From: Octopus sinensis
Taxonomy: Eukaryota
Direction of reading: 5' to 3'
Length of the DNA: 33,291 nt
Assembly (NCBI RefSeq): GCF_006345805.1
Contig: NW_021832113.1
Location: forward strand, 1-33,291
A program made the position numbers and the translations under genes. This document shows, piece after piece, positions 1 through 21,282 of the stretch (position 1 is the first letter of the stretch; the number at the start of each line of letters is the position of its first letter). Under the pieces are notes generated by a model. It had not been told where the DNA came from. It searched no databases and worked only from the letters and a program-made list of their open reading frames with translations.

Positions 1-1430
1 AAAGTCACGATAGAGTTAATATTGTCTTCTGGAAGAGGGAACTATAATTTATTTCTTTAGGTGTAAACTCGTGAGTTAATAAGATAGTTGTTTGTTTTTC
101 TACTAAGATCTTTCGTAAGTTTTCTGATAGGTTATTCTTGATGTTGTTATGTAGCCAGATGTCTGTCGTAATATGTTGTATTTTCTGGGGCTGTGTACCC
201 TGAATGTCTCTGAATTCTAATTAAATATTAACTCTGTATAAGAATATTCATCATGAACTTAATTTTATTAAATGTTAAATTTGGTATTGAACCGTGAACA
301 TCTGTTTGCATTTAAACAAATTATTGGTGTTTATACAAAATATACAAACGGAAATTGAATATAACTTGAATACACAAATCCTTCTTTGTAACTATATATA
401 ATATACACTTATTACATTGTTTGAACAGCATTTACCATCCATATAGTCATTCTTTTTCTCACTCTTGTTAGATTTTAGATGATATTAATGCTAAAAGAGG
501 CACAGTTTTCCGAGTGTTTCACCATTTGGTCTTGATTGTTGCGTTCAAATTATTTAATGAAAGATAGTCATTGTTATTTGACCAGGAAATGAATTAATCA
601 TTAGTATTTGGCAGTGGACTTGGTTATATCTTTCTTCGTTTGCTCATGGAACTACCATAATATTAGCTGTGCTGAGACACAGTCATATTCATAGTAATGA
701 AGGCTATATGTTCTTTACTCAGATTATATACAATCTATATTGATATCTAGTATTGCACCGTCAAGCACAGTGCCATTGTATCACATATATACCCAATTAT
801 CATGATAATTAATAAGCTATAATTCATTAACTCTCTTACAGTTGTATGTCTGAATTGTAAACTGATTTTGTCATAGGGACATCGTGTACCATCACATTAC
901 ATTTTATATCTTGTTAGGGATCATGTTGGGGAAGGGTGTATGGAATTTGGCTTGTGGAGATGATTTTTAGGGGACAGATTGTGTGCGGGGTGGAGGGTAT
1001 GCACATAAAGGACATGTCTTTATGGGCTCAGTTTCACTTAATTAGAGAGGAATTCTAGAGATGAGAGGACAGTGCCATGCCATAGATTTGGCACAGTTAT
1101 AAGAAAAGAAAGACAAAGCCAAGGGAAAACTGTTATCAAGTTTTAATTAAATGAGATAATTGCAACATTGTTAGAATATTTAATGTGTTTTTAGAGAGAG
1201 AGAGGGAGAGGGTGGATTTAGAAATGTTAGTCTGTTTTATTGTGGACATATTGAGCTATTACATGGGACCACTGTAGAAAGTACAGAAATATTGACCAAA
1301 ACCATAATGGTCAACATTTGACCAGTAACGACAGGAATTGAATGTCTCACAATAACAAGGTAGTGTTTAATAAAAATAAAGATAAAGGAAGTTTATTTTT
1401 AAGTGTAAAACTTGGAAATATTTATTTCAG

Positions 1431-1508
1431 GGGCTCCAGAGTTTGAGGACAGATGTGTACAAACGGAGGCTACATGTCAGGAATTAGGGGCTGCATCTCA
1501 AGCAATAG
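1431..1508 (+). CDS. Repeat exon R1, 78 nt, phase 1-1: (G)APEFEDRCVQTEATCQELGAASQAI
   Basis: tttatttcag|GGGCTCC...GCAATAG|gtgagt; only the phase-1 frame is open. Confidence 0.75.
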
Positions 1509-4500
1509 GTGAGTATAAAATAATAGTTCCTAATTGATTTCTGTAAGGTTTTCTTCCCCCGAGTATATTGTGCTTGAAAAAATAACTGAAAACAGCTTCC
1601 ATTCCCCTTTTCCAATTGAACGATTATCCGTATAATAATTGAATTAAAGATATCGATTTGCTGAGAGTTTATGAAATACTCATTGAGGTTAATGCTGTTG
1701 GTAATAATGTTCAAATTAGAAGACACAATAGAGTTAATATTGTCATTTGGTGACGGAACGCATCATCATCATCATAATCATCATCATCGTTTAACGTCCG
1801 TTTTCATTGTAGCATGGGTTGGACGATTTCACTGGCAAGGCAGTAGGCTGCGCCAGGCTCCAATGTGATCTGGCAAGGTTTCCACATATGTATGCCATTC
1901 CTAACCACTTCGAGAGTGTGGTGGGTGCTTTTTACGTGCCACCGACACAGGAGCCAGTTGAAGTGGGAGCTGGTATTGACCACGTTCGGATGGTACTTTT
2001 TACATGCCAACGGCACAGGGAACCAGTCAGGCGGCACTGGGCACAAACAACGCTTGAATGTTACGTAATACGTGCCACCGGCACGGTTGCCAGTGAGGCG
2101 GCACTGGCATCGGCCATAATTACAATTTGCATTTTGATTTCGATCTTGATTTGATTTTGATTCGTGATTTCTGGTTTTTGGTTTTACTTGATTCAGAAAT
2201 TCTTCTCAAGCGCAACTTATCACTCTGTGATTCAAGGGCACTTTTAAAAGGGGCTGGTTATGCGACACTGGTATAGGCTACAGCTTTGATCTCACTTCAC
2301 TTGCCGGGTCTTCTCAATCACATCATATTTACAGAGGTCTCTGTCTCTTGCCATTACCTCTGTGAGGCCCAACGTTCGAAGGTCGTTTCACCACGTCATC
2401 CCCTGTCTTCCTGGGTCAGCCCTTTCCACGGATTCCTTCCACTGTGAGGGTGTAACACTTCTTCCCACAGCTCTCCTCATCCATACACATGACCATACCA
2501 GTGCAGTTGTCTCTCTTGTACACCACATCTGATACTTATTATGTCTAACACTTCTCTCAGGCCTCTTCACTCTGCATTGTGTGCACACTGACATCATTGG
2601 GTTCAAATTATTTAATAGAATATGGTCATTGTTATTTGACCAGGAAATGAATTAAGCATTAGTATTTGACAGTGGACTTGGTTATATCTTTCTTCGTTTG
2701 CTCATGGAACTACCATAATATTAGCTGTGCTGAGACACAATCATATTCATTGTAATGAAGGTTATACGTTCTTTACTCATATTATATACAATCTATATTA
2801 ATATCTAGTATTGCACCGTCAAGCACAGTGCCATTGTATTACATATATACCTAATTATCATGATAATTAATAAGCTATAATTCATTAACTCTCTTACAAT
2901 TGTATGTCTGAAATGTAAACTTATTTTGTCATAGCATCATCCTGTACCCTCACTTAACATTTTTCACCTTGTTAGGGATCATGTGGGGGAAGGGTATATG
3001 GAATTTGGCTTGTGGAGATGTCTTGTAGGGGACAGATTGTGTGCGGGGTGGAGAGTATGCACATAGAGGACATGTTTTATGGGCTCAGTTTCACTTAATT
3101 AGAGAGGAATGTTGATTAGTGAATTCTAGAGATGAGAGGACAGTGCCATGCCATGGATTTGGTAGTTATAAGAAAAGAAAGACAAAGTCAAGAGAAAACT
3201 CTTATCAAGTGTTAATTAAATGAGATAATTGGTACATTGTTAGAATATTCAATGTGTTCTTAGAGAGATAGATAGAGAGAGAGAGAGAGCGGGTGGATTT
3301 AGAAATGTTAGTCTGTTTTATTGTGGACATATTGTGCTATTACATGAGACCACTGTAGAAAGTACAGAAATATTGACCAAAACCATAATGGTCAACATTT
3401 GACCAGTAACGACAGGAATTGAATGTCTCACAATAACAAGGTAGTGCTTAATAAAAATAAAGATAAAGAAAGTTTATTTTTAAATGTAAAACTTGGAAAT
3501 ATTTATTTCAGGGGCTCCAGAGTTTGAGGACAGGTGTGTACAAACGGAGGCTACATGTCAGGAATTAGGGGCTGCATCTCAAGCAATAGGTGAGTATAAA
3601 ATAATAGTTCCCAATTGATTTCTGTAAGATTTTCTTCCCCCGAGTATATTGTGCTTGAAAGAATAACTGAAAAAAGCTTCCATTCCTATTTTCCAATTGA
3701 ACGATTATCCGTATAGTAATTGAATTAAAGATATCGATTTACTGAGAGTTTATGAAATTCCCATTGAGGTTAATGCTGTTGGTAATAATGTTCAAATTAG
3801 AAGACACAATAGAGTTAATATTGTCATTTGGTGACGGAACGCATCATCATCATCATAATCATCATCATCGTTTAACGTCCGTCTTCATAGTAGCATGGGT
3901 CGGACGAATTCACTGGCAAGGCAGTAGGCTGCGCCAGGCTCCAATGTGATCTGGCAAGGTTTCCACATATGTATGCCATTCCTAACGCCAACCACTCCGA
4001 GAGTGTGGTGGGTGCTTTTTACGTGCCACCCACACAGGAGCCAGTTGAAGTGGGGGCTGGTATTGACCACGTTCGGATGGTGCTTTTTACGTGCCAATGG
4101 CACAGGGAACCAGTCAGGCGGCACTGGCCACAAACAACGTTTGAATGTTACTTATTACATGCCATCGGCACGGTTGTCAGCGAGGCGGCACTGGCATCGG
4201 CCATAATTACAATTTGCATTTTGATTTCGATCTTGATTTGATTTTGATTTGTGATTTCTGGTTTTTGGTTTTACTTGACTCAGAAATTCTTCTCAAGTGC
4301 AACTTATCACTCTGTGATTCAAGGGTACTTTTAAAAGGGGCTGGTTATGCGACACTGGTATAGGCTACAGCTTTGATCTCACTTCACTTGCCGGGTCTTC
4401 TCAATCACATCATATTTACAGAGGTCTCTGTCTCTTGCCATTACCTCTGTGAGGCCCAACGTTCGAAGGTCGCTTCACCACGTCATCCCCTGTCTTCCTG

Positions 4501-7500
4501 GGTCACCTCACTTCCACGGGTTCCTTCCACTGTGAGGGTGTAACACTTCTTCCCACAGCTCTCCTCATCCATACACATGACCATACCAGTGCAGTTGTCT
4601 CTCTTGTACACCACATCTGATGCTTCTTATGTCTAACACTTCTCTCAGGCCTCTTCACTCTGCATTGTGTGCACACTGACATCATTGGGTTCAAATTATT
4701 TAATAGAATATGGTCATTGTTATTTGACCAGGAAATGAATTAAGCATTAGTATTTGGCAGTGGACTTGGTTATATCTTTCTTCATTTGCTCATGGAACTA
4801 CCATAATATTAGCTGTGCTGAGACACAATCATATTCATTGTAATGAAGGTTATACGTTCTTTACTCAGATTATATACAATCTATATTGATATCTAGTATT
4901 GCACTGTCAAGCACAGTGCCGTTATATCACATATATACCCAATTATCATGATAATTAATAAGCTATAATTCATTAACTCCCTTACATTTGTATGTATGAA
5001 ATGTAAACGTATTTTGACATAGCATCATCGTGTACCCTCACTTAACATTTTTCACCTTGTTAGGGATCATGTTGGGGAAGGGTATATGGAATTTGGCTTG
5101 TGGAGATGTTTTTTAGGGGACAGATTGTGTGCGGGGTGGAGAGTATGCACATAAAGGACATGTCTTTATGGGCTCAGTTTCACTTAATTAGAGAGGAATT
5201 CTAGAGATGAGAGGACAGTGCCATGCCATAGATTTGGCACAGTTATAAGAAAAGAAAGACAAAGCCAAGGGAAAACTGTTATCAAGTGTTAATTAAATGA
5301 GATAATTGGTACATTGTTAGAATATTTAATGTATTCTTAGAGAGAGAGAGAGAACGAGAGAGAGGGAGGGTGGATTTAGAAATGTTAGTCTGTTTTATTG
5401 TGGACATATTGGGCTATTACATGAGACCACTGTAAAAAGTACAGAAATATTGACCAAAACCATAATGGTCAACATTTGACCAGTAACGACAGGAATTGAA
5501 TGACTCACAATAACAAGGTAGAGTTTAATAAAAATAAAGATAAAGAAAGTTTATTTTTAAATGTAAAACTTGGAAATATTTATTTCAGGGGCTCCAGAGT
5601 TTGAGGACAGGTGTGTACAAACGGAGGCTACATGTCAGGAATTAGGGGCTGCATCTCAAGCAATAGGTGAGTATAAAATAATAGTTCCCAATTGATTTCT
5701 GTAAGGTTTTCTTCCCCTGAGTATATTGTGCTTGAAAGAATAACTGAAAATAGCTTCCATTCCTATTTTCCAATTGAACGATTATCCGTATAGTAATTGA
5801 ATTAAAGATATCGATTTACTGAGGGTTTATGAAATTCCCATTGAGGTTAATGCTGTTGGTAATAATGTTCAAATTAGAAGACACAATAGAGTTAATATTG
5901 TCATTTGGTGACGGAACGCATCATCACCATCATAATTATCATCATCGTTTAACGTTCGTTTTCATAGTAGCATGGGTTGGACGATTTCACTGGCAAGGCA
6001 GTAGGCTGCGCCAGGCTCCAATGTGATCTGGCAAGGTTTCCACATATGTATGCCATTCCTAACGCCAACCACTTCGAGAGTGTGGTGGGTGCTTTTTACG
6101 TGCCACCGACACAGGAGCCAGTTGAAGTGGGAGCTGGTATTGACCACGTTCGGATGGTACTTTTTACATGCCAACGGCACAGGGAACCAGTCAGGCGGCA
6201 CTGGGCACAAACAACGCTTGAATGTTACGTAATACGTGCCACCGGCACGGTTGTCAGTGAGGCGGCACTGGCATCGGCCATAATTACAATTTGCATTTTG
6301 ATTTCGATCTTGATTTGATTTTGATTCGTGATTTCTGGTTTTTGGTTTTACTTGATTCAGAAATTCTTCTCAAGCGCAACTTATCACTCTGTGATTCAAG
6401 GCACTTTTAAAAGGGGCTGGTTATGCGACACTGGTATAGGCTACAGCTTTGATCTCACTTCACTTGCCGGGTCTTCTCAATCACATCATATTTACAGAGG
6501 TCTCTGTCTCTTGCCATTACCTCTGTGGGCCCAACGTTCGAAGGTCGTTTCACCACGTCATCCCCTGTCTTCCTGGGTCAGCCCTTTCCACGGATTCCTT
6601 CCACTGTGAGGGTGTAACACTTCTTCCCACAGCTCTCCTCATCCATACACATGACCATACCAGTGCAGTTGTCTCTCTTGTACACCACATCTGATACTTA
6701 TTATGTCTAACACTTCTCTCAGGCCTCTTCACTCTGCATTGTGTGCACACTGACATCGTTGGGTTCAAATTATTTAATAGAATATGGTCATTGTTATTTG
6801 ACCAGGAAATGAATTAAGCATTAGTATTTGGCAGTGGACTTGGTTATATCTTTCTTCGTTTGCTCATGGAACTACCATAATATTAGCTGTGCTGAGACAC
6901 AATCATATTCATTGTAATGAAGGTTATACGTTCTTTACTCAGATTATATACAATCTATATTGATATCTAGTATTGCACCGTCAGGCACAGTGACATTGTA
7001 TCACATATATACCTAATTATCATGATAATTAATAAGCTATAATTCATTAACTCTCTTACATTTGTATGTCTGAAATGTAAACTTATTTTGTCATAGCATC
7101 ATCCTGTACCCTCACTTAACATTTTTCACCTTGTTAGTGATCATGTGGGGGAAGGGTATATGGAATTTGGCTTGTGGAGATGTTTTGTAGGGGACAGATT
7201 GTGTGCGGGGTGGAGGGTATGCACATAGAGGACATGTTTTATGGGCTCAGTTTCACTTAATTAGAGAGGTATGTTGATTAGTGAATTCTAGAGATGAGAG
7301 GACAGTGCCATGCCATGGATTTGGTAGTTATAAGAAAAGAAAGACAAAGTCAAGAGAAAACTCTTATCAAGTGTTAATTAAATGAGATAATTGGTACATT
7401 GTTAGAATATTTAATGTGTTCTTAGAGAGATAGATAGAGAGAGCGAGAGAGCGGGTGGATTTAGAAATGTTAGCCTGTTTTATTGTGGACATATTGGGCT

Positions 7501-10500
7501 ATTACATGAGACCACTGTAGAAAGTACAGAAATATTGACCAAAACCATAATGGTCAACATTTGACCAGTAACGACAGGAATTGAATGTCTCACAATAACA
7601 AGGTAGTGCTTAATAAAAATAAAGATAAAGAAAGTTTATTTTTAAATGTAAAACTTGGAAATATTTATTTCAGGGGCTCCAGAGTTTGAGGACAGGTGTG
7701 TACAAACGGAGGCTACATGTCAGGAATTAGGGGCTGCATCTCAAGCAATAGGTGAGTATAAAATAATAGTTCCCAATTGATTTCTGTAAGGTTTTCTTCC
7801 CCCGAGTATATTGTGCTTGAAAGAATAACTGAAAATAGCTTCCATTCCTATTTTCCAATTGAACGATTATCCGTATAGTAATTGAATTAAAGATATCGAT
7901 TTACTGAGGGTTTATGAAATTCCCATTGAGGTTAATGCTGTTGGTAATAATGTTCAAATTAGAAGACACAATAGAGTTAATATTGTCATTTGGTGACGGA
8001 ACGCATCATCATCATCGTTTAACGTCCGTCTTCATAGTAGCATGAGTCGGACGAATTCAATGGCAAGGCAGTAGGCTGCGCCAGGCTCCAATGTGATCTG
8101 GCAAGGTTTCCACATATGAATGCCATTCCTAACGCCAACCACTTCGAGAGTGTGGTGGGTGCTTTTTACGTGCCAACAGCACAGGGAACCAGTCAGGCGG
8201 CACTGGCCACAAACAACGTTTGAATGTTACTTATTACGTGCCACCGGCACGGGTGCCAGCCAGGCGGCACTGGCATCGGCCATAATTACAATTTGCATTT
8301 TGATTTCGATCTTCATTTGATTTTGATTTGTGATTTCTGGTTTTTGGTTTTACTTGATTCAGAAATTCTTCTCAAGCGCAACTTATCACTCTGTGATTCA
8401 AGGGTACTTTTAAAAGGGGCTGGTTATGCGACACTGGTATAGGCTACAGCTTTGATCTCACTTCACTTGCCGGGTCTTCTCAATCACATCATATTTACAG
8501 AGGTCTCTGTCTCTTGCCATTACCTCTGTGAGGCCCAACGTTCGAAGTCATTTCATTTCACCACGTCATCCCCTGTCTTCCTGGGTCACCCCTTTCCACG
8601 GATTCCTTCCACTGTGAGGGTGTAACACTTCTTCCCACAGCTCTCCTCATCCATACACATGACCATACCAGTGCAGTTGTCTCTCTTGTACACACACATC
8701 TGATACTTATTATGTCTAACACTTCTCTCTCAGGCCTCTTCACTCTGCATTGTGTGCACACTGACATCGTTGGGTTCAAATTATTTAATAGAATATGGTC
8801 ATTGTTATTTGACCAGGAAATGAATTAAGCATTAGTATTTGATAGTGGACTTGGTTATATCTTTCTTCGTTTGCTCATGGAACTACCATAATATTAGCTG
8901 TGCTGAGACACAATCATATTCATTGTAATGAAGGTTATATGTTCTTTACTCAGATTATATAGAATCTATATTGATATCTAGTATTGCACTGTCAAGCACA
9001 GTGCCATTGTATTACATATATACCTAATTATCATGATAATTAATAAGCTATAATTCATTAACTCTCTTACATTTGTATGTATGAAATGTAAACTTATTTT
9101 GTCATAGCATCATCCTGTACCCTCACTTAACATTTTTCACCTTGTTAGGGATCATGTGGGGGAAGGGTATATGGAATTTGGCTTGTGGAGATGTTTTGTA
9201 GGGGACAGATTGTGTGCGGGGTGGAGGGTATGCACATAGAGGACATGTTTTATGGGCTCAGTTTCACTTAATTAGAGAGGTATGTTGATTAGTGAATTCT
9301 AGAGATGAGAGGACAGTGCCATGCCATAGATTTGGTAGTTATAAGAAAAGAAAGACAAAGTCAAGAGAAAACTCTTATCAAGTGTTAATTAAATGAGATA
9401 ATTGGTACAATGTTAGAATATTTAATGTGTTCTTAGAGAGATAGATAGAGAGAGAGAGAGAGCGGGTGGATTTAGAAATGTTAGCCTGTTTTATTGTGGA
9501 CATATTGGGCTATTACATGAGACCACTGTAGAAAGTACAGAAATATTGACCAAAACCATAATGGTCAACATTTGACCAGTAACGACAGGAATTGAATGTC
9601 TCACAATAACAAGGTAGTGCTTAATAAAGATAAAGAAAGTTTATTTTTAAATGTAAAACTTGGAAATATTTATTTCAGGGGCTCCAGAGTTTGAGGACAG
9701 GTGTGTACAAACGGAGGCTACATGTCAGGAATTAGGGGCTGCATCTCAAGCAATAGGTGAGTATAAAATAATAGTTCCCAATTGATTTCTGTAAGGTTTT
9801 CTTCCCCCGAGTATATTGTGCTTGAAAGAATAACTGAAAACAGCTTCCATTCCTATTTTCCAATTGAACGATTATCCGTATAGTAATTGAATTAAAGATA
9901 TCGATTTACTGAGAGTTTATGAAATTCCCATTGAGGTTAATGCTGTTGGTAATAATGTTCAAATTAGAAGACACAATAGAGTTAATATTGTCATTTGGTG
10001 ACGGAACGCATCATCATCATCATAATCATCATCATCGGTTAACGTCCGTCTTCATAGTAGCATGGGTCGGACGAATTCACTGGCAAGGCAGTAGGCTGCA
10101 CCAGGCTCCAATGTGATCTGGCAAGGTTTCCACATATGTATGCCATTCCTAACGCCAACCACTCCGAGAGTGTGGTGGGTGCTGTTTACGTGCCACCGAC
10201 ACAGGAGCCAGTTGAAGTGGGGGCTGGTATTGACCACGTTCGGATGGTGCTTTTTACGTGCCAACAGCACAGGGAACCAGTCAGGCGGCACTGGCCACAA
10301 ACAACGTTTGAATGTTACTTATTACGTGCCACTGGCACGGGTGCCAGCCAGGCGGCACTGGCATCGGCCGTAATTGCAATTTGCATTTTGATTTCGATCT
10401 TCATTTGATTTTGATTTGTGATTTCTGGTTTTTGGTTTTACTTGATTCAGAAATTCTTCTCAAGCGCAACTTATCACTCTGTGATTCAAGGGTACTTTTA

Positions 10501-13500
10501 AAAAGGGCTGGTTATGTGACACTGGTATAGGCTACAGCTTTGATCTCACTTCACTTGCCGGGTCTTCTCAATCACATCATATATACAGAGGTCTCTGTCT
10601 CTTGCCATTACCTCTGTGAGGCCCAACGTTCGAAGGTCGTTTCACCACGTCATCCCCTGTCTTCCTGGGTCACCCCTTTCCACGGATTCCTTCCACTGTG
10701 AGGGGGTAACACTTCTTCCCACAGCTCTCCTCATCCATACACATGACCATACCAGTGCAGTTGTCTCTCTTGTACACCACATCTGATACTTATTATGTCT
10801 AACACTTCTCTCAGGCCTCTTCACTCTGCATTGTGTGCACACTGACATCGTTGGGTTCAAATTATTTAATAGAATATGGTCATTGTTATTTGACCAGGAA
10901 ATGAATTAATCATTAGTATTTGACAGTGGACTTGGTTATATCTTTCTTCGTTTGCTCATGGAACTACCATAATATTAGCTGTGCTGAGACACAATCATAT
11001 TCATTGTAATGAAGGTTATATGTTCTTTACTCAGATTATATAGAATCTATATTGATATCTAGTATTGCACTGTCAGGCACAGTGACATTGTATCACATAT
11101 ATACCCAATTATCATGATAATTAATAAGCTATAATTCATTAACTCTCTTAGATTTGTATGTCTGAAATGTAAACTTATTTTGTCATAGGAACATCATGTA
11201 CCCTCACCTTACATTTTATATTTTGTTAGGGATCATGTTGGGGAAGGATGTGTGCAATTTGGCTTGTGGAGATGTTTTTTAGGGGACAGATTGTGTGCGG
11301 AGTGGAGGGTATGCACATAAAGGACATCTTTATGGGCTCAGTTTTACTTAATTAGAGAGTTGATTAGTGAACTCTAGAGATGAGAGGACTGTGCCATGCC
11401 ATGGATTTGGTAGTTATAAGAAAAGAAAGACAAAGCTAAGAGAAAACTGTTATCAAGTGTTAATTAAATGAGATAATTGCAACATTGTTAGAATATTTAA
11501 TGTGTTTTTAGAGAGAGAGAGAGAGAGGAGGGGAGGGTGGATTCAGGAATGCTAGTCTGTTTTATTGTGGACATATTGGGCTATTACATGGGACCACTGT
11601 AGAAAGTACAGAAATATTGACCAAAACCATAATGGTCAACATTTGACCAGTAACGACAGAAATTGAATGTCTCACAATAACAAGATAGAGTTTAATAAAA
11701 ATAAAGATAAAGAAAGTTTATTTTTAAATGTAAAACTTGGAAATATTTATTTCAGAGGCTCCAAAGTTTGAGGACAGGCGTGTAAAAACAGAGGCTACAT
11801 GTCAGGAATTAGGGGCTGCATCTCAGGTAATAGGTGAGTATAAAATAATAGTTCCCAATTGATTTCTGTAAGGTTTTCTTCCCCCGAGTATATTGTGCTT
11901 GAAAGAATAACTGAAAACAGCTTCCATTCCTATTTTCTAATTGAACGATTATCTGTATAATAATTGAATTAAAGATATCGATTTACTGTGAGTTTATGAA
12001 ATACCCATTGAGGTTAGCACTGTTGGTAATAATGTTCAAATTAGAAGACACAATAGAGTAAATTTTGTCATTTGGTCACAAGTATAATCAAGTATAATCT
12101 TGGAAATATTTATTTCAGCAAGGCCAATATTTGAAGACAAAGAGGTCCAGACAGTAGAAGAGCCACGTGCTGAGTATAGAATGACATTACATAATTGATT
12201 TCTATAAAGTTTAGCTTTTACTGAGCTATTTTGGTCAATAGAATGACCGAGAACAGATACCACTGCTACATTTTATTTGAATGCTTAGCTATAAAGAAAT
12301 TCTGTTCTTCTACAACAACATGAATATCCAATAAATGTACTTTATGCAAACATCTGTTACTCATTCACTCGCAGAAAGAAAGATACAAACATTAAATATA
12401 AACCCTGAAACGGTTCTCTCCCGTTAAGGAGAATATTCGCCCTGTTTGTCATCTCATTGTACTCATTCATTCTCTCTCTCTCACTCATGCTCTTTCTCTC
12501 CGTCTTTTCAAGAAAGATGCTGGTTAAAAGTTTCAATACAATAAATGATATCATCTTCATCTTTTCTCATCTGCTCTCCATGCTCCCATACACTAGGTGG
12601 GTCATCACTGTCCAAGTCAGTTGTATCTGAAATTACTGCCAACCGTCATTTGTTGAGGAAAACATCTCACTTAAACATTGCAGCTTTTCTAAGGTGGTAG
12701 ACCCTTTCTAACCCCAACCACTTTATAAAGGGTCCTGGGTATATTTTATTGTTGCACAAGCATTAGAAATGATCATCAATTCCCCAACAATATCAAACGT
12801 TCCTTTCAAACTTGTGGTGTCATCTTTCCTAGTTTCCACCAACCACTTCCTAGTGTGTTCTGGGAGCATTTAATTATAGCACAAGTAGTAATCAAGTTGT
12901 GTTACATTCTATATAATTAGACGGTCCTCACTATTCTATGATGTTTTGGTTCACTGAAGCTGATGACATTTTCAGGAGGTGAGAAGGGAATGTGATGACA
13001 AAAGTATCAGGATGCGGGGAGAGAAATTTGCAATACCCCCTCTCCTGGCTGTGGGGTCTTTGTCTTACATGTCTTTTGGCTAAATATGCCAGTACTTGTG
13101 CTTTATAAAAAGGGGCCACGTACACTTTGTGAGGTGGTTGGCATCAGTAAGAGCATCCTACAGTAGAAAACCATGCAAAAGAAACCATCTGGGGCCTGGT
13201 GCAGTTGTCTGGCTTGTCAGATCCTGTCAAGATTTCCAACCCATTCCAGCTTGGAAAACAAATTTTGAATATTGATGATGAGGATGATGATGCTGTCTTC
13301 CAGTAACTCATCATAATTCTTTGTCTTAGATTGTTACAGTAGTTTCCTGTCTGGTATAACATATTAGCTCAGTATAATAATATTGATTGTGAAAACCGGT
13401 TCAGTGATTTTGATAACATTCATATTGAACAGAGAACATATGTTCACATTTGAACAAAACATTGATGCTAGCATATGCAATACATGGAAAGGAATGAACG

Positions 13501-16500
13501 TATGAGATTCCAGTGTGACTTGAACTTACAACACTTTTCTAACTATATATATATAATTATCGCTTGTTACGATGTTTGTATAACGTTTACTGTCCATATA
13601 TAGACATCGTTATACTGAAAATTGTTGGCTTTGAGATGGTTTCAATTGTAAGAGAGTCACTGTTTTCAGTCTTCCACATTTTGGTTTTACTTCCGACTTG
13701 ATTGTTCTGTTGAAATTAGATCATGGAACCTGGTCATTGTTATTTGACCAAGAAAAGAATTCATCATTAGTATTCAGTACTGGAAATGGTTACATTTTTC
13801 TATGGTTTCTCATGGAACTACCATAATATCAACTGTGCTGAGACACAACCATATTAATTGTAACAAATGTCACATGTTCTTCACACAGATTTTATACAAT
13901 CTATATTGATAGTTAGTGTTTATACGCTGCATTAACATGATAATTAATCAGCTATCATCCATTAACTCTCTTAAACTTGTCTGTCTGAAAGTTTCATAGC
14001 ATTATCTTGTACCCTCATCTAATATTTTACACCTTATTACCCTCAAAGTAAACATAACTTTTACATGGGTACACAACCACATCCCTACGAACTAGTTTTA
14101 CAGCTGTATGCCCTTCCCACAATAATAAAGTGTTGATTATCAATAACTATAATGAAATTATACTATAAAACGTAAAGCTTGAAAATATTCATTTCAAAGA
14201 CTCCAACTTCTGTGAAGGATGCCTTAACAACATCACAGCCAGTTGGTGAGTAGCAAATAACAGTACCTCATGGATTTCTATAAATTTAACCTTCACCTGA
14301 GCATTAGTAGTTTATCAGAATGACTGAGGACAAGATCCATTCCTAATTTACATCTGAAATATTAACTGTAAAATAATTCTATTAGACATTTTGATATCAA
14401 TGAAATTTCACAAAATATCCAACGGGGATGGCATGGTTTGGAAAATAGATAATTTAGAAGACAATAGAATTAATACTGTATCTTAAAACGGAAGACTAAA
14501 ATATGTAGTTACTAAGTTTACTGATAGGTTATTGCTGTTGTTGCTATTTTGGCAAATATCTCTCATAATGTGACAGATTTACAATGAAATGTGTTCCTTG
14601 TGTGAACACCCTGCCTTTTTTTTTTGACTGATAATAAATTTATCATTGCATCCCCTAAACATTGTCTTTATCCATGTAAAAGTATTAGGTTTGATGTTGA
14701 GACAACCGTCCTCTCTCTCTCTCTCTCCAAGATAGACACTGATGACCCTCATCATTTATCATCTGATGTCTATGCTCCTATCGATTGGATGGATGATTCC
14801 TATCCATGTCAGTTCTTATTAACAAATACTGTCCGCCTCGATTGGATGAGGAACACATTCCGGCTTTTCTATGGTGATGTGCCTTTCCTAACATCAACCA
14901 CTTTAAAAGGGCCTTGGGCACAATTTTGCTCCAAAAGCACTAGAAAAATTGTCGTCAACAAAATTAAACGCTCCTCTTTAACTTCTACAAGGAAATTCTG
15001 TTTGCAGATACTGAGAACAGAAAGCTAAAATACAATAAAGATGAACTGGATGGATATATGCTGGAGATCCAAAGCAAAAGCAGTGATTCCCATTCATAGA
15101 CAGTTTGAAATGTCCATTGAAACCAGCAATCAAATACCGATTGATTAGTTCAGACTAATTTCAACCTTGAATATAAATGGCGAGATTTACAAGGTTGTAT
15201 TCACAAAGAGATCAACTGTAAATCTACAGAATAATGAATATGGGACTAAAAGTATCTTGAAGACTGGAATCCTCTGGCATTCCAGGCTGTGTGGAACATG
15301 TGTCTTAAATCTTGGATGTGATACAAGACGGAAAGAAGAATAAAAGGGATTGAATGTTGTGTGATTTGATCTGGTTTATGGTTCTCTAGCAAACAAATTG
15401 TTGATGGAAGCAGTGGACCTGTTTTATATATGAGAAAAGATTAAGGATCTGATGAGGAGCTGCTATAACAATTTCAATATGCAGTTCATGAGGAAAACTT
15501 TCTCGATAGACTGGTATCATTTTGAAACGGGAATTGCTGTAGTTTCTACAAAATCAGTCATTTGGTTTGTGATTGTTATGGAGATGTTACTTAAATCAGC
15601 AGATTGATAAGAAATGGCTCAAAGGAAAACACTCGAGAAGACATTAATGGATTACATAACAATAGTAACAACAAATAAAAGGATATGCAAATAGTTCTGG
15701 ATTAACTGGGTAGACTGAGGAACTTGGTGAAGAATGTGCTTCAATGCAAATGGGTAATGAAGCCCGTCATTTGTGAAAGGTCAGCAGAAACAAGTGAAGG
15801 TCAAAATAGCAGGAGAAACCCTGATGAAGTTTAAAGGGAAACTTGAAAAACTATTACGACGATGGTAAACTACCTAATTTTGCAATAATAGTAAAGGCAT
15901 TGAGATCATGTCACAGAACGAAGATGGGTTAAAAGAAATAAATATGCCAAACATTCTGGAAAATAAAAGATTTGGAGCTCGCACTTTGTATTCCCGTCTT
16001 TCTTATATATTTTTGAGTATCAGTCCTTTTGTACCATTTCAGATGTCTTCACTGCATTAATGTGTAGATGTCCAGTTGTATGTAGTTAATGGGGTTTTGT
16101 ACAAGTGTGCAGTGTTTTAGGACACCTGATATCACTTTTTGTTTCATCTGTGGAGAACTGATCATTGCTCACCTTTATTAAGGAGTCTTAAAATATTCCC
16201 TGCATCTGATAATGACCTGGTGATCTGGGATGTAGGATGATAAAATTCACGATTTTCCAACAGCAAAGAGAACTGGTATTACGTTTATTTTACTTGAAGT
16301 GGTGTGTCATGCATTTGTGACGAGATCTTTGGAGACCACATTGGATGATATTGCACTTTAGCAGAAGATGAGGAGAATGGTGGTTAGTGAAGTCTAGAGT
16401 TTAGAGGACAGTCGCATGTCATAGATTTGGTTCAGATATATGAAAGGAGAGAGAGAACTATGAGAAGAAACAGTCTCATGAAATGATAATTAAATGAAAT

Positions 16501-18573
16501 AATTGCAACATTGTTAGATTATGTAGGATGTCTCTGTTAAAGAGAAATAAAGTTTCGGAAAGTTAGTCTATTTTGTTGCAGGCCTAAATATTGAGCTATT
16601 ACCTGGTCCCACAATGGAAAGTATAAAAATACTGAGCAAAACCCTAGTGGTCACCAGCCAGCCAACCACTGATGATAATAAATGTCCCACAACAATAAAC
16701 TACAGAATATTTATAGAGATAAATTATAAAACTTGGAAATATTTATTTCAGAGAGTCCAGTTCTGAAGGAGAGGGATCTTCTGAGAGTGGCTAAGAGGTT
16801 AGGACGTGATTGGTGGCAAGTGGGTGAGTATATTTGATTTCTATATATTTTACTTTCACCTGATCTATTTTATTTGTCAGAATGAATGAGAACAAGTTAC
16901 ATTCCTCATTTCCCATTGATAGGTTATCTGTATGACAATTTTATTTACGATATTCCTGATATTTCATAAAATATCCACTGAGGTTAGCATGGTTAGTAAT
17001 AATGGATAAACTAGAAAATAGAAATGGCGTTTAATATTATCTTTTGGAAGAAGGAACTAAAATATATTGTTTAAGGGTAAACAGATGAGTGAATTTGTTT
17101 TACATTTTCTTTAGGTTCACTGTTAGGTTATTGTAATGAAGGACAAGTACCAAAGTTAACATCTAAAACAAAGCATCTTTCTTCAAACAGAAGACTTTGA
17201 GTTTGGTTCTTCTTGCAGCCATTATTTATTGGGTTATTGTGTTGGAAGCTGATAATTCCAATTTAGATTGTCATTTTGTAATGACTTTACCACATGACAT
17301 ATGTCTGTAAATGCTTCAATAAAAAGAGATTTAATAAAGGTGACACAGCGAAATCCTATCATTCTCCTCAGGCGAAAACAGAGAATTCCTTTAAGGGAAT
17401 TTACCAGAAAATGAACTGGAGGTGGCATCTCTCATTGAGACTGACATAATAATAACTGAATAGGCTCTGTAGAATTGATTGAACCTGGAGTTCATTGGAG
17501 AAGTTTGAAATGGGTTGAATTTGACTTAGAATTATCGACTGTTGGACAATCACTGATCATTCGATTTTTAGTGTCCTCTTGGGAACTTTGCAAGGTAGTA
17601 GATGGCACAGAGGGACAGTACTTTCATGACCCTTTGAATACCAGGTCTGAAATCTACCAGAATAAGACAGATATATGGGATTCCTCTAAAGGGTCTTTGG
17701 AGTAATGTTACTCAATAGGATTTATAGTTCAGAGATCTGGGAGTCTCTCCAGGTTGAGCCACGTCTCCTCCACATCTGTGGTACCTCGGACATGTGATCA
17801 GGGTGTTGCAGGAATGAATTACAGGACATGTTCTCAAAGTCAAACCAATGGAACAGGATACCGAGGGGGAGGCCAAGAAAGAAATGGTTGGATGATATCC
17901 ATAGTCTTAGTTCTTCACATCATAGAATACAAGCAGAATGTCTAATGATGGATGCTTCTGATAGGACCCTATGGAGGAGGTGCCTGAGGACTCTTTCCCC
18001 ACAGCCCTTTCAAGAATATTGAGCAGAGGAAATGGATGGATCATATGCTTTCACTGTTGGAGGTCAATGTTAATTCTTGAGGTTCTGATATACTTTTGCC
18101 TTCACAAAAGTTTTCCTGCCCTCGTTTACCATATATTTTCTCAAGTATAATTTTCAATTAATTTTCTTTAAAAATCTCGTTTAATTCAAACTCTTTGTTA
18201 TTTTTGTCAATAGAAAACAATGTCTTATATTTTTCCTGTTTCTTAGCTATTTCTTTTTTGATTTCTCTAATGATAAAGTTTGTTTGTTATATTCATAACA
18301 ACCTACAGTACACAGCGTTTTATGTTATTGTCAGTGTTGTTGCATTTATTTCTTATTGTTGTGTCTTTTGCAGCTATTTTTTTAGGAGTTGATACAACTG
18401 AACTGAAAATTGATGATGAGTCTATTGACACTGTAAAACAAGGCTACCTGATGCTTCGCGAATGGTTCAAAAATTGCGACCCAGAAACACGGACACACGC
18501 AACATTAAGTGCAGCTCTTGAAGAAGCTGAATGTTTCACTGCGATGGAATGTCTGTCATTAGACGCAAAGTGA
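1431..18573 (+). CDS. 5'-partial multi-exon gene: tandem 26-aa repeat linker followed by a C-terminal death domain (gene start lies upstream of the window)
   Basis: Canonical AG/GT exons, all phase 1, join in frame. The last two give ESPVLKERDLLRVAKRLGRDWWQVAIFLGVDTTELKIDDESIDTVKQGYLMLREWFKNCDPETRTHATLSAALEEAECFTAMECLSLDAK*, which fits the death-domain pattern (VA..LG.DW..A..LG, Y.ML..W, T...L..AL). Which repeat exons are actually included is not known. Confidence 0.82.
1761..2601 (-). mobile_element. 5'-truncated RTE-type LINE (ORF C-terminus + 3'UTR + (GAT)n tail), copy 1
   Basis: The minus strand carries a degenerate C-terminus (IRCGVQER..WYGHV..VEG..G.G.PRKT) like the more intact copy at 29150-29425; the (CAT)n on + is the tail. 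Confidence 0.85.
3512..3589 (+). CDS. Repeat exon R2, same peptide as R1
   Basis: Same splice sites; differs from R1 only by a synonymous AGA>AGG. Confidence 0.75.
3842..4689 (-). mobile_element. RTE fragment copy 2 (amplified with the unit)
   Basis: Same junctions as copy 1. Confidence 0.85.
5589..5666 (+). CDS. Repeat exon R3, same peptide as R1
   Basis: tttatttcag| and |gtgagt; identical to R2. Confidence 0.75.
5919..6763 (-). mobile_element. RTE fragment copy 3
   Basis: Same junctions; shares diagnostic variants with copy 1. Confidence 0.85.
7674..7751 (+). CDS. Repeat exon R4, same peptide as R1
   Basis: tttatttcag| and |gtgagt; identical to R2. Confidence 0.75.
8004..8774 (-). mobile_element. 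RTE fragment copy 4 with internal 68-bp deletion
   Basis: Same junctions; lacks one 68-bp sub-repeat and has a shorter (CAT)n. Confidence 0.85.
9679..9756 (+). CDS. Repeat exon R5, same peptide as R1
   Basis: tttatttcag| and |gtgagt; identical to R2. Confidence 0.75.
10009..10855 (-). mobile_element. RTE fragment copy 5
   Basis: Same junctions as copies 1-4. Confidence 0.85.
11756..11833 (+). CDS. Repeat exon R6 (diverged): (E)APKFEDRRVKTEATCQELGAASQVI
   Basis: Canonical sites and 78 nt long, with several non-synonymous changes (VQT>VKT); has a new internal CAG|GTAATA donor-like site after 11826. Confidence 0.7.
12119..12166 (+). CDS. Older repeat exon R7: (A)RPIFEDKEVQTVEEP; ancestral donor lost
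   Basis: Intact cttggaaatatttatttcag acceptor. The homologous donor at 12170 reads ctgagt instead of gtgagt. An in-frame GT at 12167 would give a 48-nt phase 1-1 exon. Confidence 0.45.
13136..13292 (+). mobile_element. Old RTE/SINE-family 3' end with (GAT)n tail
   Basis: ggttggcatcagtaagagcatcc...ccaacccattccagcttggaaaac...gatgatgaggatgatgatg is a diverged sense copy of the same 3' end. Confidence 0.7.
13420..14560 (+). repeat. Diverged paralogue of the intron-exon unit (contains R8)
   Basis: Collinear with 280-910 and with the exon flanks; for example 13809-13847 matches 643-681 at 37/39. Confidence 0.9.
14198..14245 (+). pseudogene. Older repeat exon R8: TPTSVKDALTTSQPV; ancestral acceptor mutated (AG>AA)
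   Basis: cttgaaaatattcatttcaa|AGACTCC...CAGTTG|gtgagt lies in a paralogous intron unit; an alternative AG at 14198-14199 gives a 46-nt exon that starts in phase 0. Confidence 0.45.
15010..15868 (+). mobile_element. Degenerate non-LTR reverse transcriptase remnant (R2-group, Hero/NeSL-like, tentative)
   Basis: Frameshifted motifs FRLISTLN, GIPGCVEH, LNVV*FDL.YGS, WYHFETGIA...SVIWFVIVMEMLL, LMDYITIVT. Confidence 0.8.
16380..17095 (+). repeat. Diverged paralogue of the intron-exon unit surrounding death-domain exon 1
   Basis: Collinear with the R-exon flanks (ttagtgaa.tctagag, aattaaatga.ataatt, identical cttggaaatatttatttcag, ctgaggttagca, ggaagaaggaacta). Confidence 0.9.
16752..16823 (+). 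CDS. Death-domain exon 1: (E)SPVLKERDLLRVAKRLGRDWWQV
   Basis: tttatttcag| and |gtgagt, 72 nt, phase 1-1; carries the death-domain N-terminal motif VA..LG.DW. Confidence 0.85.
17690..18015 (+). mobile_element. RTE (Expander/Rex3-like) LINE 3' fragment
   Basis: LQVEPRLLHI, WYLGHVIR, PRGRPRKKWLDDI...DRTLWRRCLRTLSPQP across frameshifts. Confidence 0.7.
18374..18573 (+). CDS. Death-domain exon 2 (terminal coding exon) ending in TGA
   Basis: gtgtcttttgcag|CT ATT TTT TTA GGA; in frame with the previous exon; matches the 3' part of ORF 18280..18573. Confidence 0.88.
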
Positions 18574-18815
18574 ATTTCCATGTAACTGTTGTTGTTTAGC
18601 TTCAGATTAACCTTGACCAAACAGAGTCTTTTGATCAAACGCATTCCAGCCAGGACCATCATGCCTATTTCCAAAGAGAACCCACAACCACCTCGTCCAA
18701 TATGCCCTTCTGTACAGTGATATCGTGTGAATTTAGCTACTAATTCTAGCAGGTATATCAACCACATTGTGATCCCATCACTGGTTTTGCTCCTTTGTTA
18801 AAAATTCACTTTTAA

Positions 18816-18821
18816 AATAAA
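18816..18821 (+). terminator. Putative polyadenylation signal of the death-domain gene
   Basis: AATAAA about 240 nt after the stop, followed by a GT-rich tract (gttgttgctgttgttgt) near 18845. Confidence 0.55.
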
Positions 18822-20254
18822 GACAAAGTTTGAAATGTTCATTTATTGTTGTTGCTGTTGTTGTATATCTAATCCCATCCCTATATTGTTATATAGACAG
18901 CTTTAATATCTTCTCCTATATTGATAGTTATCTACCTTCATTTTTAGCTGAGAGTAGAATGCCTGGTATATATATATTGATGTCTTTTCCCTTTATATAT
19001 CCTATAGAGATAGTATTTCTATATAATACATGATGTATCTAAGGATATATCTCACTTTGTCCTGTTGTGGTTTAAGACAGGCCTCTCCAAAGTGGCGGTG
19101 GTTGAATAAAAATTCAGGGGGTTTTGAGTGCAATATACAATATTTTAATTTTATATTCTTACTTTATGACCTTCGTTATTTACTAATGACTGCAATTTTC
19201 GTCAGTAAAAATAAACTTCACTATTATACATATGAAAATAAATCAAACAAATTAAAATTAAACAATAGCTGTGCTGAAAAATTGTGAGATAATAAAATAA
19301 TGACACAACATTTGTTGTTTTAATTGCATGTGATTGTGGAAAAGCCACAGTGTCTCCCTCTTTTTAAGTAACTTCAGATAAAGGAAGAGTACAATTCTTC
19401 CCTACAATATTTACCTTCATATTACTCCACTGTTATTACATGTTATTTTAATTTGAAATTAGATTTCAAGTTCTTACAGCAGAGACCAAGATTAAATAAG
19501 TAAAATACATGAGACCTTTATGTACATTATAAGATGTGACAGGAAGCTCTACCGAGCAGACTTTTGTGGAATTGGAAAGGAAGACTCATAAGTATTCTCC
19601 ACTTTTTATTGGATTCTTTTGTGATAGAAGTGAACAAACCTGATTGTTTTTAAATTAAATAATCAAGATATTTAAATTAGATAAAAATAAACTTTATTCA
19701 GAAATTGATAATTACTTTTAAAGCAAACCGAAATTTTACCGGTGAGTGTGTTAAATAATAAGGCACTAAAAGAGAATGACTCTCCCCAGACACAACAAAA
19801 TTATTTTGTATCAAACTTTGTACAAAATTATTCCAAATAAATTGATAACATAAGTTTCTGATTTTTTTCTTGGATAACTTGGGGAGAAATGCTTTTCACA
19901 CATTATATGCAATGTAAATACACAACAAAAAAATAAAGCTGTCCAAAGCTATAGGTTACTGTTTATATAGACCAGCTGGAGCAAATTTAGTTTAACATTT
20001 AATGCGTAGCAATAAACTCATTTATATAAGTGTTAGTTTTCTATAAATTGAGAAAACGTAAGACTTTTAGTGACTTTATAAAACTAAAAAGAGTAACTTC
20101 AAACTTTGGTGACCCCAGACAAATTCCTTTACTGACGGAGATATTCGTCTTGTTTTGGTCAATGACTGTCAAAGTAATTTTCATATTTTAAAAGCATCAA
20201 AAGGAAAATATGTTGCCCAGAGAAGAGAGGTTGAATTTGTCAAATTATAAAAGC

Positions 20255-20390
20255 ACAGAGAATAATGATGGACTGGACATTTTCTTTAGGTTAATGATCA
20301 GAGGATCCTTAAACAGATGCTATATGCTAAACTTCTGTATGGAGAGAGCCCCCAGCAGAAACGAAGACTACGATTTAAGGACTGTGTATG
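20255..20390 (+). mobile_element. RTE LINE C-terminal fragment
   Basis: WTGHFL*VNDQRILKQMLYAKLLYGESPQQKRRLRFKDCV. Confidence 0.7.
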
Positions 20391-20439
20391 TATATATATA
20401 TATAAACTGAGCGGATACTTACCAGGCTGAAAAAATGTA

Positions 20440-21047: not shown

Positions 21048-21096
<49 letters not shown>

Positions 21097-21270: not shown

Positions 21271-21274
21271 CAAC

Positions 21275-21282
21275 CATATATG

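What the first reader, a model, noticed from the sequence alone, without database searches (positions are those of the whole stretch)
1431..18573. Hidden tandem array of frame-symmetric mini-exons feeding a C-terminal death-domain protein
Seen: each 2.08 kb unit carries a 78-nt AG/GT-bounded exon that the ORF track misses. All repeat exons and death-domain exon 1 are phase 1-1 and a multiple of 3 long (78, 48, 72 nt), so any subset can be skipped or added without a frameshift. Established: death domains are homotypic adaptors in apoptosis and innate-immune signalling. Inference: the linker upstream of the death domain can vary in length through both genomic copy number and cassette splicing, a possibly undescribed, tunable immune or cell-death adaptor in a cephalopod.
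Basis: partly seen in the sequence, partly recalled or inferred. Interest (0 to 1): 0.9.

Follow-up and report, generated by a model that had tools for sequence, protein, structure and literature searches.

The report
Octopus repeated-exon linker before death domain
The window holds the 3' half of an octopus gene, already in RefSeq as "MIB1-like", in which a 2.08-kb block carrying a 78-base exon is repeated six times ahead of a death domain, so the array is real but is a further example of a known kind of length-variable repeat gene.

Summary
The window holds about 5.5 tandem copies of a 2.08-kb unit. Six 78-nt exons with tttcag|…|gtgagt borders are followed by a 48/51-nt mini-exon, a decayed mini-exon and two death-domain (DD) exons ending at the TGA at 18573. 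All the linker exons and DD exon 1 are phase 1-1.

It is not an unannotated gene. The window is a 98-100% identical copy of an Octopus sinensis locus (CM016885.1) whose RefSeq product, "E3 ubiquitin-protein ligase MIB1-like" isoforms X1-X5, reads ankyrin repeats, one RING, n × 26-aa repeat, then a C-terminal DD. The Ank and RING exons lie just upstream of the window.

- **Isoforms:** the RefSeq isoforms already differ by inclusion of these cassettes.
- **Copy number:** 78-nt exon counts are 6 (window), 4 (O. sinensis reference), 1 (O. vulgaris orthologue), 4 and at least 4 (two paralogues) and 0 (another paralogue). The 6-versus-4 difference could be assembly collapse.
- **Family:** dozens of loci, all from Octopus among the top hits, and not found in the literature searched.

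The "adaptor" reading is only partly right, because the protein is a putative RING E3 ligase carrying a DD. Any tuning role for linker length is inference. This is a new member of known kinds (coding tandem repeats, molluscan RING-DD fusions) and is of moderate interest.

The parts
495..12076 (+). Tandem array of a ~2.08-kb unit: five full units plus a sixth truncated after its exon.
   Evidence: Spacings are 2005-2088 nt at 94-100% identity. Units 1 and 2 are 100% identical to units 1 and 2 of the O. sinensis reference locus L001.
1431..1508 (+). 78-nt cassette exon, copy 1, phase 1-1, encoding (G)APEFEDRCVQTEATCQELGAASQAI.
   Evidence: Borders are tttcag| and |gtgagt. The identical exon is used in the RefSeq X1 model.
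3512..3589 (+). 78-nt cassette exon, copy 2.
5589..5666 (+). 78-nt cassette exon, copy 3.
7674..7751 (+). 78-nt cassette exon, copy 4.
9679..9756 (+). 78-nt cassette exon, copy 5.
11756..11833 (+). 78-nt cassette exon, copy 6, a variant encoding (E)APKFEDRRVKTEATCQELGAASQVI.
   Evidence: It has 8 substitutions. It is identical to L001 23982-24059, which is used in RefSeq X1 and X2 and skipped in X3, X4 and X5.
12119..12169 (+). Mini-exon of 51 nt as modelled by RefSeq (…ARPIFEDKEVQTVEEPR), or 48 nt if the GT at 12167 is used.
   Evidence: The homologous donor is CT here and in L001, but GT in paralogue L002 and in O. vulgaris L003. The RefSeq chain reproduces only with the CT donor. Both lengths keep the frame.
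14198..14245 (+). Decayed mini-exon, (Q)TPTSVKDALTTSQPV, with its acceptor AG changed to AA.
   Evidence: The AA acceptor is seen in the window and in L001, L002, L003 and L004. No O. sinensis or O. vulgaris model whose sequence was read here contains this peptide. The O. bimaculoides homologue P0026 does contain the homologous peptide.
16752..16823 (+). Death-domain exon 1 (72 nt, phase 1-1), encoding SPVLKERDLLRVAKRLGRDWWQV.
   Evidence: It shares its acceptor flank and first ~25 nt with the mini-exons. It is identical to paralogue L002 and differs at 4 nt (3 aa) from L001.
18374..18573 (+). Death-domain exon 2 (200 nt), ending in the stop codon TGA.
   Evidence: The AF2 model of both DD exons has pLDDT 86, and its best PDB match is the RIPK1 DD at TM 0.81.
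1765..2566 (.). Transposon-derived insert inside unit 1, present in every full unit. It holds ~65-nt internal repeats and an antisense LINE 3' tail.
   Evidence: The same sequence recurs at 22190-22450 and 28790-29424. The ORF at 29150-29425(-) reads …GRGRPRKTW…. The LINE identification rests on recall of that motif.
18816..18821 (+). Candidate polyadenylation signal AATAAA, 243 nt after the stop codon.
   Evidence: Sequence only. Its role is inferred.

Best explanation
The window is the 3' half of an Octopus sinensis-type gene for a putative RING E3 ubiquitin ligase. Its layout is ankyrin repeats, one C3HC4 RING, a modular acidic linker, then a C-terminal death domain.

**How the linker is built.** It is made of homologous phase 1-1 mini-exons (48-51 nt and a 78-nt derivative). 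These arose by serial tandem duplication of a block made of intron tail, exon and intron head, and death-domain exon 1 belongs to the same series. At this locus a transposon inserted into one such block. The resulting 2.08-kb unit was then amplified, presumably by unequal crossing-over between units, to six 78-nt exons.

**Consequences.** Every unit is a multiple of 3 and phase-symmetric, so unit gain, unit loss or exon skipping each change the RING-to-DD linker by 26 (or 16-17) residues without a frameshift.

**Inferred function.** The DD docks the ligase on DD-containing signalling assemblies. The flexible linker sets how far the RING-E2 can reach. Donor read-through isoforms would lack the DD altogether.
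For: **Shown.**
- Array and exon anatomy.
- The locus matches O. sinensis CM016885.1, 98-99% over the long alignments and 100% for units 1-2.
- RefSeq protein X1 is rebuilt exactly from that exon chain, with phases 1-1 for all linker exons and DD exon 1.
- Isoforms X1-X5 differ only in cassette content. Paralogue LOC115225502 carries isoform numbers up to X17, and the five aligned here differ only in 17-aa cassettes.
- Pfam finds Ank, zf-C3HC4_3 and Death in family members. The Death cut-off is passed by P0011 (36.7 bits) and P0028 (27.7 bits).
- DD assignment by profile and by fold.
- All five exon types share the 23-nt acceptor flank AAACTTGGAAATATTTATTTCAG and the start of the exon. The intron upstream of DD exon 1 is homologous to the 3' end of the unit.
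- The acceptor flank (-26 to -1) shows 0% divergence between paralogous arrays.
- pN/pS is 0.38 over 12 distinct 78-nt exon copies.
- Copy numbers are 6/4/1/4/≥4/0.
- The linker has pLDDT 28-66, against 85-93 for the DD and 82-95 for the Ank repeats.

**Inferred.** Unequal crossing-over as the amplifying mechanism, ligase activity, DD-mediated recruitment, and any functional effect of linker length.
Against: - No transcript reads could be examined. RefSeq isoforms over near-identical exons, with 97%-identical paralogues present, may be partly mapping artefacts.
- Between paralogous arrays the 78-nt exon is no better conserved than its flanking intron: 5.5-8.9% against 2.8-8.6%. Constraint on the peptide is therefore modest.
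- The 51-nt exon has a non-canonical CT donor at this locus, and one unit is dead. This copy may be decaying.
- The third unit of the reference mostly carries the majority state of window units 3-5, as expected if the older assembly collapsed three units. Polymorphism within the species is therefore unproven.
- No biochemical data exist for any family member.
Confidence: 0.6

Rival explanations
1. The array and exons are real, but the variability is mostly apparent. The 6-versus-4 difference is assembly collapse, and the repeat-number isoforms come from short reads mapped ambiguously among identical exons and close paralogues. In vivo the gene would make essentially one product containing all repeats.
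For: - Units 1-2 are 100% identical between the two assemblies, while reference unit 3 is mostly a majority-state mosaic of window units 3-5 with a unit-5 tail.
- Differences between the two assemblies are patchy: 0 per 500 nt in many bins and about 5% in others. Mixing of paralogue reads during polishing would look like this.
- Paralogue L002 is 97-98.7% identical to the window from 12087 onwards.
Against: - Independent assemblies and loci show 0, 1, 4 and ≥4 copies, so copy number changes at least between species and between paralogues.
- Isoforms X2-X5 need junctions that differ in sequence from exon-to-exon repeats, such as SQAI|ESPVLK, SQVI|ESPVLK and SQAI|ARPIF.
- Cassette variation is annotated in several paralogues.
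Confidence: 0.25
2. This particular copy is a decaying member of a large, fast-turnover family. The repeat expansion is neutral unequal-crossover noise with no functional consequence.
For: - The CT donor on the 51-nt exon and the dead exon at 14198.
- The exon is no better conserved than its intron flanks.
- The RING scores below the Pfam cut-off in P0044: 25.6 bits against 27.
- The family has dozens of loci and many partial models.
Against: - The reading frame is open through all six repeats and the DD.
- The eight RING cysteine/histidine ligands are present by eye in P0044. The DD model is confident.
- Splice flanks are perfectly conserved, and pN/pS is 0.38.
- RefSeq models multiple isoforms at the locus. 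From knowledge of NCBI's pipeline, this normally requires transcript support.
Confidence: 0.15

Closest known systems
[quoted passage not shown]
   Same: A head-to-tail multi-kb unit that contains complete, frame-preserving exon(s). Copy number sets protein length. The presumed mechanism is unequal crossing-over.
   Different: Here the unit encodes a 26-aa low-confidence linker module rather than a folded domain. Copy numbers are small (0-6). Variation within the species is unproven. Cassette skipping is annotated as well.
Phase 1-1 symmetric exon modules and tandem exon duplication, meaning classical exon shuffling and mini-exon linker arrays such as titin PEVK (from general knowledge).
   Same: The exons are symmetric, phase 1-1 and multiples of 3, and can be duplicated or skipped in frame. 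The linker is an acidic region predicted with low confidence.
   Different: This is an intracellular RING-DD protein. The duplicated series includes the first exon of the folded domain itself, DD exon 1.
Mind bomb E3 ligases MIB1 and MIB2, the source of the RefSeq name. Mammalian MIB2 ubiquitylates the DD protein RIPK1 and cFLIP in TNF signalling (PMC5912950, PMC7815719).
   Same: Ankyrin repeats followed by a C-terminal C3HC4_3-type RING. The MIB1 ANK structure is among the fold and profile hits, at 31% identity.
   Different: No MIB/HERC2, ZZ or REP domain was found, and there is one RING rather than two or three. A C-terminal DD is added, which MIB proteins lack. Here the DD is fused to the ligase, rather than the ligase binding a DD protein in trans.
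Expanded oyster IAPs with novel architectures that combine RING and death domains (PMC8917759).
   Same: A mollusc-specific expansion of RING E3-type proteins that have acquired a DD.
   Different: There is no BIR domain. The domain order is Ank-RING-linker-DD. The family is restricted to Octopus among the hits seen.
Ankyrin-repeat plus DD proteins: ankyrins and ANKDD1 (ANKDD1 from general knowledge).
   Same: Ank repeats and a C-terminal DD. The ankyrin-G DD is the second-best sequence and fold match.
   Different: There is no ZU5-UPA module, and a RING and a mini-exon linker sit between the Ank repeats and the DD.

Membership tests
Death domain (Pfam PF00531, DD superfamily) | Sequence match to the DD profile | tested here: met
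   The window peptide scores 22.4 bits, E 1.3e-4, just under the 22.6-bit cut-off. Paralogues pass it: P0011 at 36.7 bits and P0028 at 27.7 bits. A family profile hits the RIPK1 DD at 3.3e-7, and also the ankyrin-3, PIDD, CRADD, FADD and Fas DDs.
Death domain (Pfam PF00531, DD superfamily) | Compact all-helical DD fold | tested here: met
   The AF2 model of the window's own 89 aa has pLDDT 86 and pTM 0.79. The top 13 Foldseek PDB hits are all DDs: RIPK1 at TM 0.81 and rmsd 2.4, then ankyrin-G, PIDD, FADD and Fas. Their E-values are weak (0.04-0.2), as expected for a short domain.
Death domain (Pfam PF00531, DD superfamily) | Homotypic DD-DD assembly | not testable with these tools
   This needs binding or oligomerisation assays.
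Mind bomb (MIB1/MIB2) E3 ligases | N-terminal MIB/HERC2-ZZ-MIB/HERC2 and REP substrate-binding region | tested here: not met
   Pfam scans of P0044, P0028, P0026 and P0032 give only Ank, RING and Death. The longest relatives listed (up to 616 aa) also show only Ank, RING and Death families.
Mind bomb (MIB1/MIB2) E3 ligases | Ankyrin repeats followed by C-terminal C3HC4_3 RING(s) | tested here: met
   Ank plus one zf-C3HC4_3 is present. The RING scores 25.6 bits in P0044, below the 27-bit cut-off, and 29.4-37.9 bits in paralogues. These exons lie upstream of the window, at L001 10001-15005.
Coding VNTR / tandemly duplicated cassette exons | Head-to-tail multi-kb unit that contains a complete exon with symmetric phase | tested here: met
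Coding VNTR / tandemly duplicated cassette exons | Repeat exons are included in mature transcripts | tested here: inconclusive
   RefSeq protein models contain them and are rebuilt exactly from the genome. The underlying RNA evidence could not be inspected.
Coding VNTR / tandemly duplicated cassette exons | Unit number varies between genomes | tested here: inconclusive
   Copy numbers are 6 (window), 4 (O. sinensis reference) and 1 (O. vulgaris orthologue), and 0, 4 and ≥4 in paralogues. The difference between species and between paralogues is clear. The 6-versus-4 difference within the species may be assembly collapse.
IAP (BIR-containing) RING-DD proteins of bivalves | At least one BIR domain | tested here: not met
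   No BIR hit appears in any Pfam scan or in the precomputed domains of 120 relatives.

The most novel reading that the evidence does not exclude
The Octopus-restricted Ank-RING-linker-DD family could be a diversifying innate-immune or cell-death E3 repertoire. Cassette number, set by unequal crossing-over and by combinatorial mini-exon splicing, together with exchange of linker+DD modules between paralogues, would generate many ligases with different reach or specificity toward death-domain signalosomes. That would be a somatic-plus-germline length-diversification system for an intracellular immune effector.
Probability: 0.12. Interest if true: 0.7.

Novelty: new member of a known kind. Interest (0 to 1): 0.35.

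Why it matters
If the linker variation is real in vivo, this family is a compact natural example of protein-length variation produced at two levels. One is genomic unit number and the other is cassette splicing, both acting on a ligase fused to a death domain.

It also documents a large gene family, seen only in Octopus among the hits examined, that couples ubiquitination to DD signalling. This parallels in cis what mammalian MIB2 does in trans with RIPK1. Cephalopod innate immunity and cell-death wiring are poorly known, so the family is a reasonable entry point.

For genome annotation, the locus is a caution. Arrays like this are easily collapsed in assembly. RefSeq here carries a CT-AG intron that is probably inherited from paralogue evidence.

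Tried and rejected
- **TRF:** it cannot see the 2.08-kb period because its limit is 500, so the repeat finder was used instead.
- **Alternative acceptor for DD exon 2:** the site at 18385 is out of frame.
- **PCF11 RFEGP-repeat Pfam hit on the linker:** E 1.7e-5 and 25.4 bits against a 43-bit cut-off. I judged it periodic compositional similarity rather than homology.
- **Contig look-ups:** P0001 and P0006 are not on record. The longest isoform, P0044, worked.
- **Excess exon conservation between paralogous arrays:** no signal. Only the acceptor flank and a modest pN/pS support constraint.
- **Foldseek on the full-length model:** swamped by ankyrin-repeat hits, so it was repeated on the DD alone.
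- **Rfam and tRNA scans of the window:** nothing found.
- **ORF scan of the rest of the window (18.6-33 kb):** only microsatellite and transposon debris and no second gene. tblastn with family proteins found nothing else.
- **DD-profile word-index search:** only short Octopus proteins. The exhaustive HMMER search was needed to see that the next relatives are generic DDs of sea stars, an annelid and fish.
- **Literature:** searches for this family in Octopus found nothing.
Full report
**1. The observation**

The repeat finder shows a head-to-tail repeat of about 2.08 kb from ~495 to ~12076. Spacings are 2005-2088 nt and identity is 94-100%. TRF could not report it because its longest period is 500.

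Each unit holds a 78-nt segment flanked by tatttatttcag| and |gtgagtataa, at 1431, 3512, 5589, 7674, 9679 and 11756. Copies 1-5 encode the same peptide, (G)APEFEDRCVQTEATCQELGAASQAI. Copy 6 has 8 substitutions and encodes (E)APKFEDRRVKTEATCQELGAASQVI.

Downstream lie four further elements:
- a 48-nt homologue at 12119-12166;
- a further homologue at 14198-14245;
- a 72-nt exon at 16752-16823;
- a 200-nt terminal exon at 18374-18573 that ends in TGA.

The spliced frame is open with the mini-exon at 48 nt, at 51 nt or skipped.

**2. What it is**

The spliced peptide finds Octopus sinensis and O. vulgaris RefSeq/GenBank proteins named "E3 ubiquitin-protein ligase MIB1/MIB2-like". Their sequences read ankyrin repeats, a C3HC4 RING, n copies of exactly this 26-aa repeat, and a C-terminal death domain.

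The longest isoform of the best hit is XP_036369820.1 (P0044, 375 aa). It maps to O. sinensis CM016885.1, fetched as L001. The window aligns to L001 at 98-99%, and units 1 and 2 are 100% identical over 2.08 kb each. The window is therefore another copy or assembly of this same locus.

I rebuilt P0044 exactly from ten L001 exons:
- The two Ank exons and the RING exon have phases 0-0, 0-2 and 2-1. They lie at L001 10001-15005, about 1.4 kb upstream of window position 1.
- Every linker exon and DD exon 1 is phase 1-1.

Nothing else gene-like is present in the window. The region 18.6-33 kb is microsatellites and transposon debris. Rfam and tRNA scans are empty.

**3. The death domain**

- The window's own 89-aa C-terminus scores 22.4 bits against Pfam Death, where the cut-off is 22.6.
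- Paralogues pass the cut-off, at 36.7 and 27.7 bits.
- A profile of eight family DDs hits the RIPK1 DD (3.3e-7), ankyrin-3, PIDD, CRADD, FADD and Fas.
- An AF2 model of the window peptide has pLDDT 86. Its top 13 PDB matches are all death domains, led by RIPK1 at TM 0.81.

The DD assignment holds.

**4. Corrections of detail**

(a) The "48-nt" exon is the 51-nt exon of its relatives. Paralogue L002 and the O. vulgaris orthologue L003 have CCACGTG|gtgagt. The window and L001 have CCACGTG|ctgagt. The RefSeq model nevertheless uses the 51-nt form, which makes a CT-AG intron. A GT 3 nt upstream (GTGCTG) would give the 48-nt in-frame version, reading …EEPQSPV… instead of …EEPRESPV…. Which form is used at this locus, if either, is unknown.

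(b) The unit at 14198 has AA in place of the acceptor AG in all five loci examined. The next AG would give 46 nt and a frameshift. No O. sinensis or O. vulgaris model whose sequence I read contains the peptide, although an O. bimaculoides homologue does. It is most likely a dead exon.

**5. Origin of the array**

An alignment of the five exon types with their flanks shows an invariant acceptor flank, AAACTTGGAAATATTTATTTCAG. It also shows homologous exon starts and homologous donor-side introns. DD exon 1 belongs to the same series.

The 78-nt form equals the 48/51-nt form plus a 27-nt insertion.

A self-comparison of one unit gives its layout:
- positions 1-78 are the exon;
- ~335-1136 are transposon-derived, recurring at 22190-22450 and 28790-29424, the latter overlapping an antisense LINE-tail ORF;
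- 1178-1551 are homologous to 13709-14039;
- 1685-2077 are homologous to 16389-16751, just upstream of DD exon 1.

The inferred history has three steps. An old series of mini-exon duplications came first. A transposon then inserted into one intron. Finally that enlarged unit was amplified recently.

**6. Variability**

*Splicing.* RefSeq isoforms X1-X5 of this locus differ only in which cassettes are present. Paralogue LOC115225502 carries isoform numbers up to X17, and the five aligned here differ only in 17-aa mini-exons between the RING and the DD. Some models end in …SQAIGEYKIIVPN, which is read-through of the donor and would remove the DD.

*Copy number.*

| Locus | 78-nt exons |
|---|---|
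| Window | 6 |
| L001 (O. sinensis reference) | 4 |
| L003 (O. vulgaris orthologue) | 1 |
| L004 (paralogue) | 4 |
| L005 (paralogue) | at least 4 |
| L002 (paralogue) | 0 |

*Caveats.*
- L001 unit 3 matches window unit 5 at 99.5% in its last third, but elsewhere it mostly carries the majority state of window units 3-5. A consensus that collapsed three units would look like this.
- Differences between the window and L001 are patchy, with 0 in many 500-nt bins and ~5% in others.
- The window's DD exon 1 is identical to paralogue L002 and differs at 4 nt (3 aa) from L001. This points to gene conversion or to paralogue mixing during assembly.
- I could not inspect any RNA reads.

**7. Constraint**

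Between paralogous arrays the exon (5.5-8.9% divergence) is no better conserved than its flanks (2.8-8.6%). The 26 nt before the acceptor are invariant.

Over 12 distinct exon copies pN/pS is 0.38. Replacements cluster at repeat residues 3-5: P/T, E/K/N and F/C/S.

In the AF2 model of P0044 the linker has pLDDT 28-66, against 82-95 for the Ank repeats and 85-93 for the DD. The repeat carries 5 acidic residues and 1 basic residue. It therefore looks like a flexible acidic spacer with some helical propensity.

**8. Family and distribution**

A profile search returns 1095 proteins at E ≤ 1e-5. Of the best 120, 118 are named Octopus proteins (sinensis, vulgaris, bimaculoides) and two carry no source name (P0122, P0128). 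Many combine Ank, RING and Death.

An exhaustive HMMER search with the DD profile gives 448 hits at E ≤ 1e-3 and 75 at E ≤ 1e-10. Ten representatives were sampled. The non-Octopus ones are generic DD proteins of sea stars, an annelid and fish. Squid and cuttlefish were not specifically excluded.

No paper describing this family was found.

**9. Likely mechanism**

*Shown:* the architecture, the exon phases, the duplication series, the copy-number differences and the annotated cassette isoforms.

*Inferred:*
- unequal crossing-over between the 2.08-kb units adds or removes 26-aa modules;
- exon skipping does the same at the RNA level;
- the DD recruits the RING ligase to DD assemblies, and linker length sets its reach.

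The nearest functional analogy is mammalian MIB2, which ubiquitylates the DD protein RIPK1 (PMC5912950, PMC7815719). In the octopus protein a RIPK1-like DD is fused to the ligase itself. RING-plus-DD fusions are already described in expanded oyster IAPs (PMC8917759). Exon-bearing multi-kb VNTRs are well known, with LPA KIV-2 as the standard example (PMC11462820).

**10. Verdict**

The protein is a putative E3 ligase rather than a bare adaptor. It is already modelled in RefSeq. Its variability is plausible but not yet proven at this locus.

It is a new member of known kinds. Its interest is moderate and rests mainly on the large, apparently undescribed, Octopus-restricted family.

Noticed in passing
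window 12167-12172 (and L001 24395): The RefSeq X1, X3 and X5 models of this locus imply a CT-AG intron, because the canonical donor G of the 51-nt exon is C in both O. sinensis copies. It is G in paralogue L002 and in O. vulgaris. The model may rest on transcript evidence from paralogues.
   Followed up: partly
window 16500-17000 (DD exon 1 region) and 500-1500: Differences between the window and the O. sinensis reference are patchy, with ~5% in these bins and 0 in many others. The window's DD exon 1 is identical to paralogue L002 and differs from the reference at 4 nt (3 aa). This suggests gene conversion between paralogues or paralogue mixing during assembly or polishing.
   Followed up: partly
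L002 (O. sinensis VCDQ01005432.1) 13653-29112 versus window 12087-28236: An unplaced scaffold carries a 97-98.7% identical copy of the 3' half of the gene plus ~10 kb of downstream intergenic DNA. It is joined to a different RING exon and has no 78-nt repeats. It is either a recent segmental duplication that made a chimeric gene or a divergent haplotig.
   Followed up: partly
78-nt exons in window, L004 and L005; paralogue LOC115225502 mini-exons: Cysteines recur in the linker modules: CX6C in the 26-aa repeat, F/C/S variation at repeat residue 5 that gives CX3CX6C, and CPKC/CPRC in the 17-aa cassettes. This might indicate metal binding, redox sensitivity or lipidation. It was not examined.
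   Followed up: no
window 1509-1535 and equivalents: Reading through the donor of a 78-nt exon gives …GEYKIIVPN followed by a stop. Several paralogue models (P0025, P0035, P0036, P0040, P0041) end this way, which would yield Ank-RING-repeat proteins without the death domain.
   Followed up: partly
window 17760-17900 (+) and 29150-29425 (-): These are LINE ORF2 C-terminal tails carrying …GRPRKKW… or GRGRPRKTW-type motifs. One sits in the intron between the two DD exons. The other is related to the transposon piece carried in every 2.08-kb unit. The identification is from recall of the motif only.
   Followed up: no
window 21276-22191, 25211-25635, 26157-26315, 28496-28791, 30580-31183: The downstream intergenic region contains long microsatellites, including (AT)~464, (TTA)41, (ATAG)35 and 67, (ACAT)62 and (TA)n. 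There are also 63-nt, 184-nt and 380-nt tandem repeats at 22366-23780 and 27401-28003.
   Followed up: no
P0014 (O. vulgaris, 278 aa): One protein model joins leucine-rich repeats directly to DD exon 2 of this family (…FIFLGVDTTKLKIDDES…). The DD exons may also be shuffled onto non-Ank/RING genes, or this may be a mis-model.
   Followed up: no
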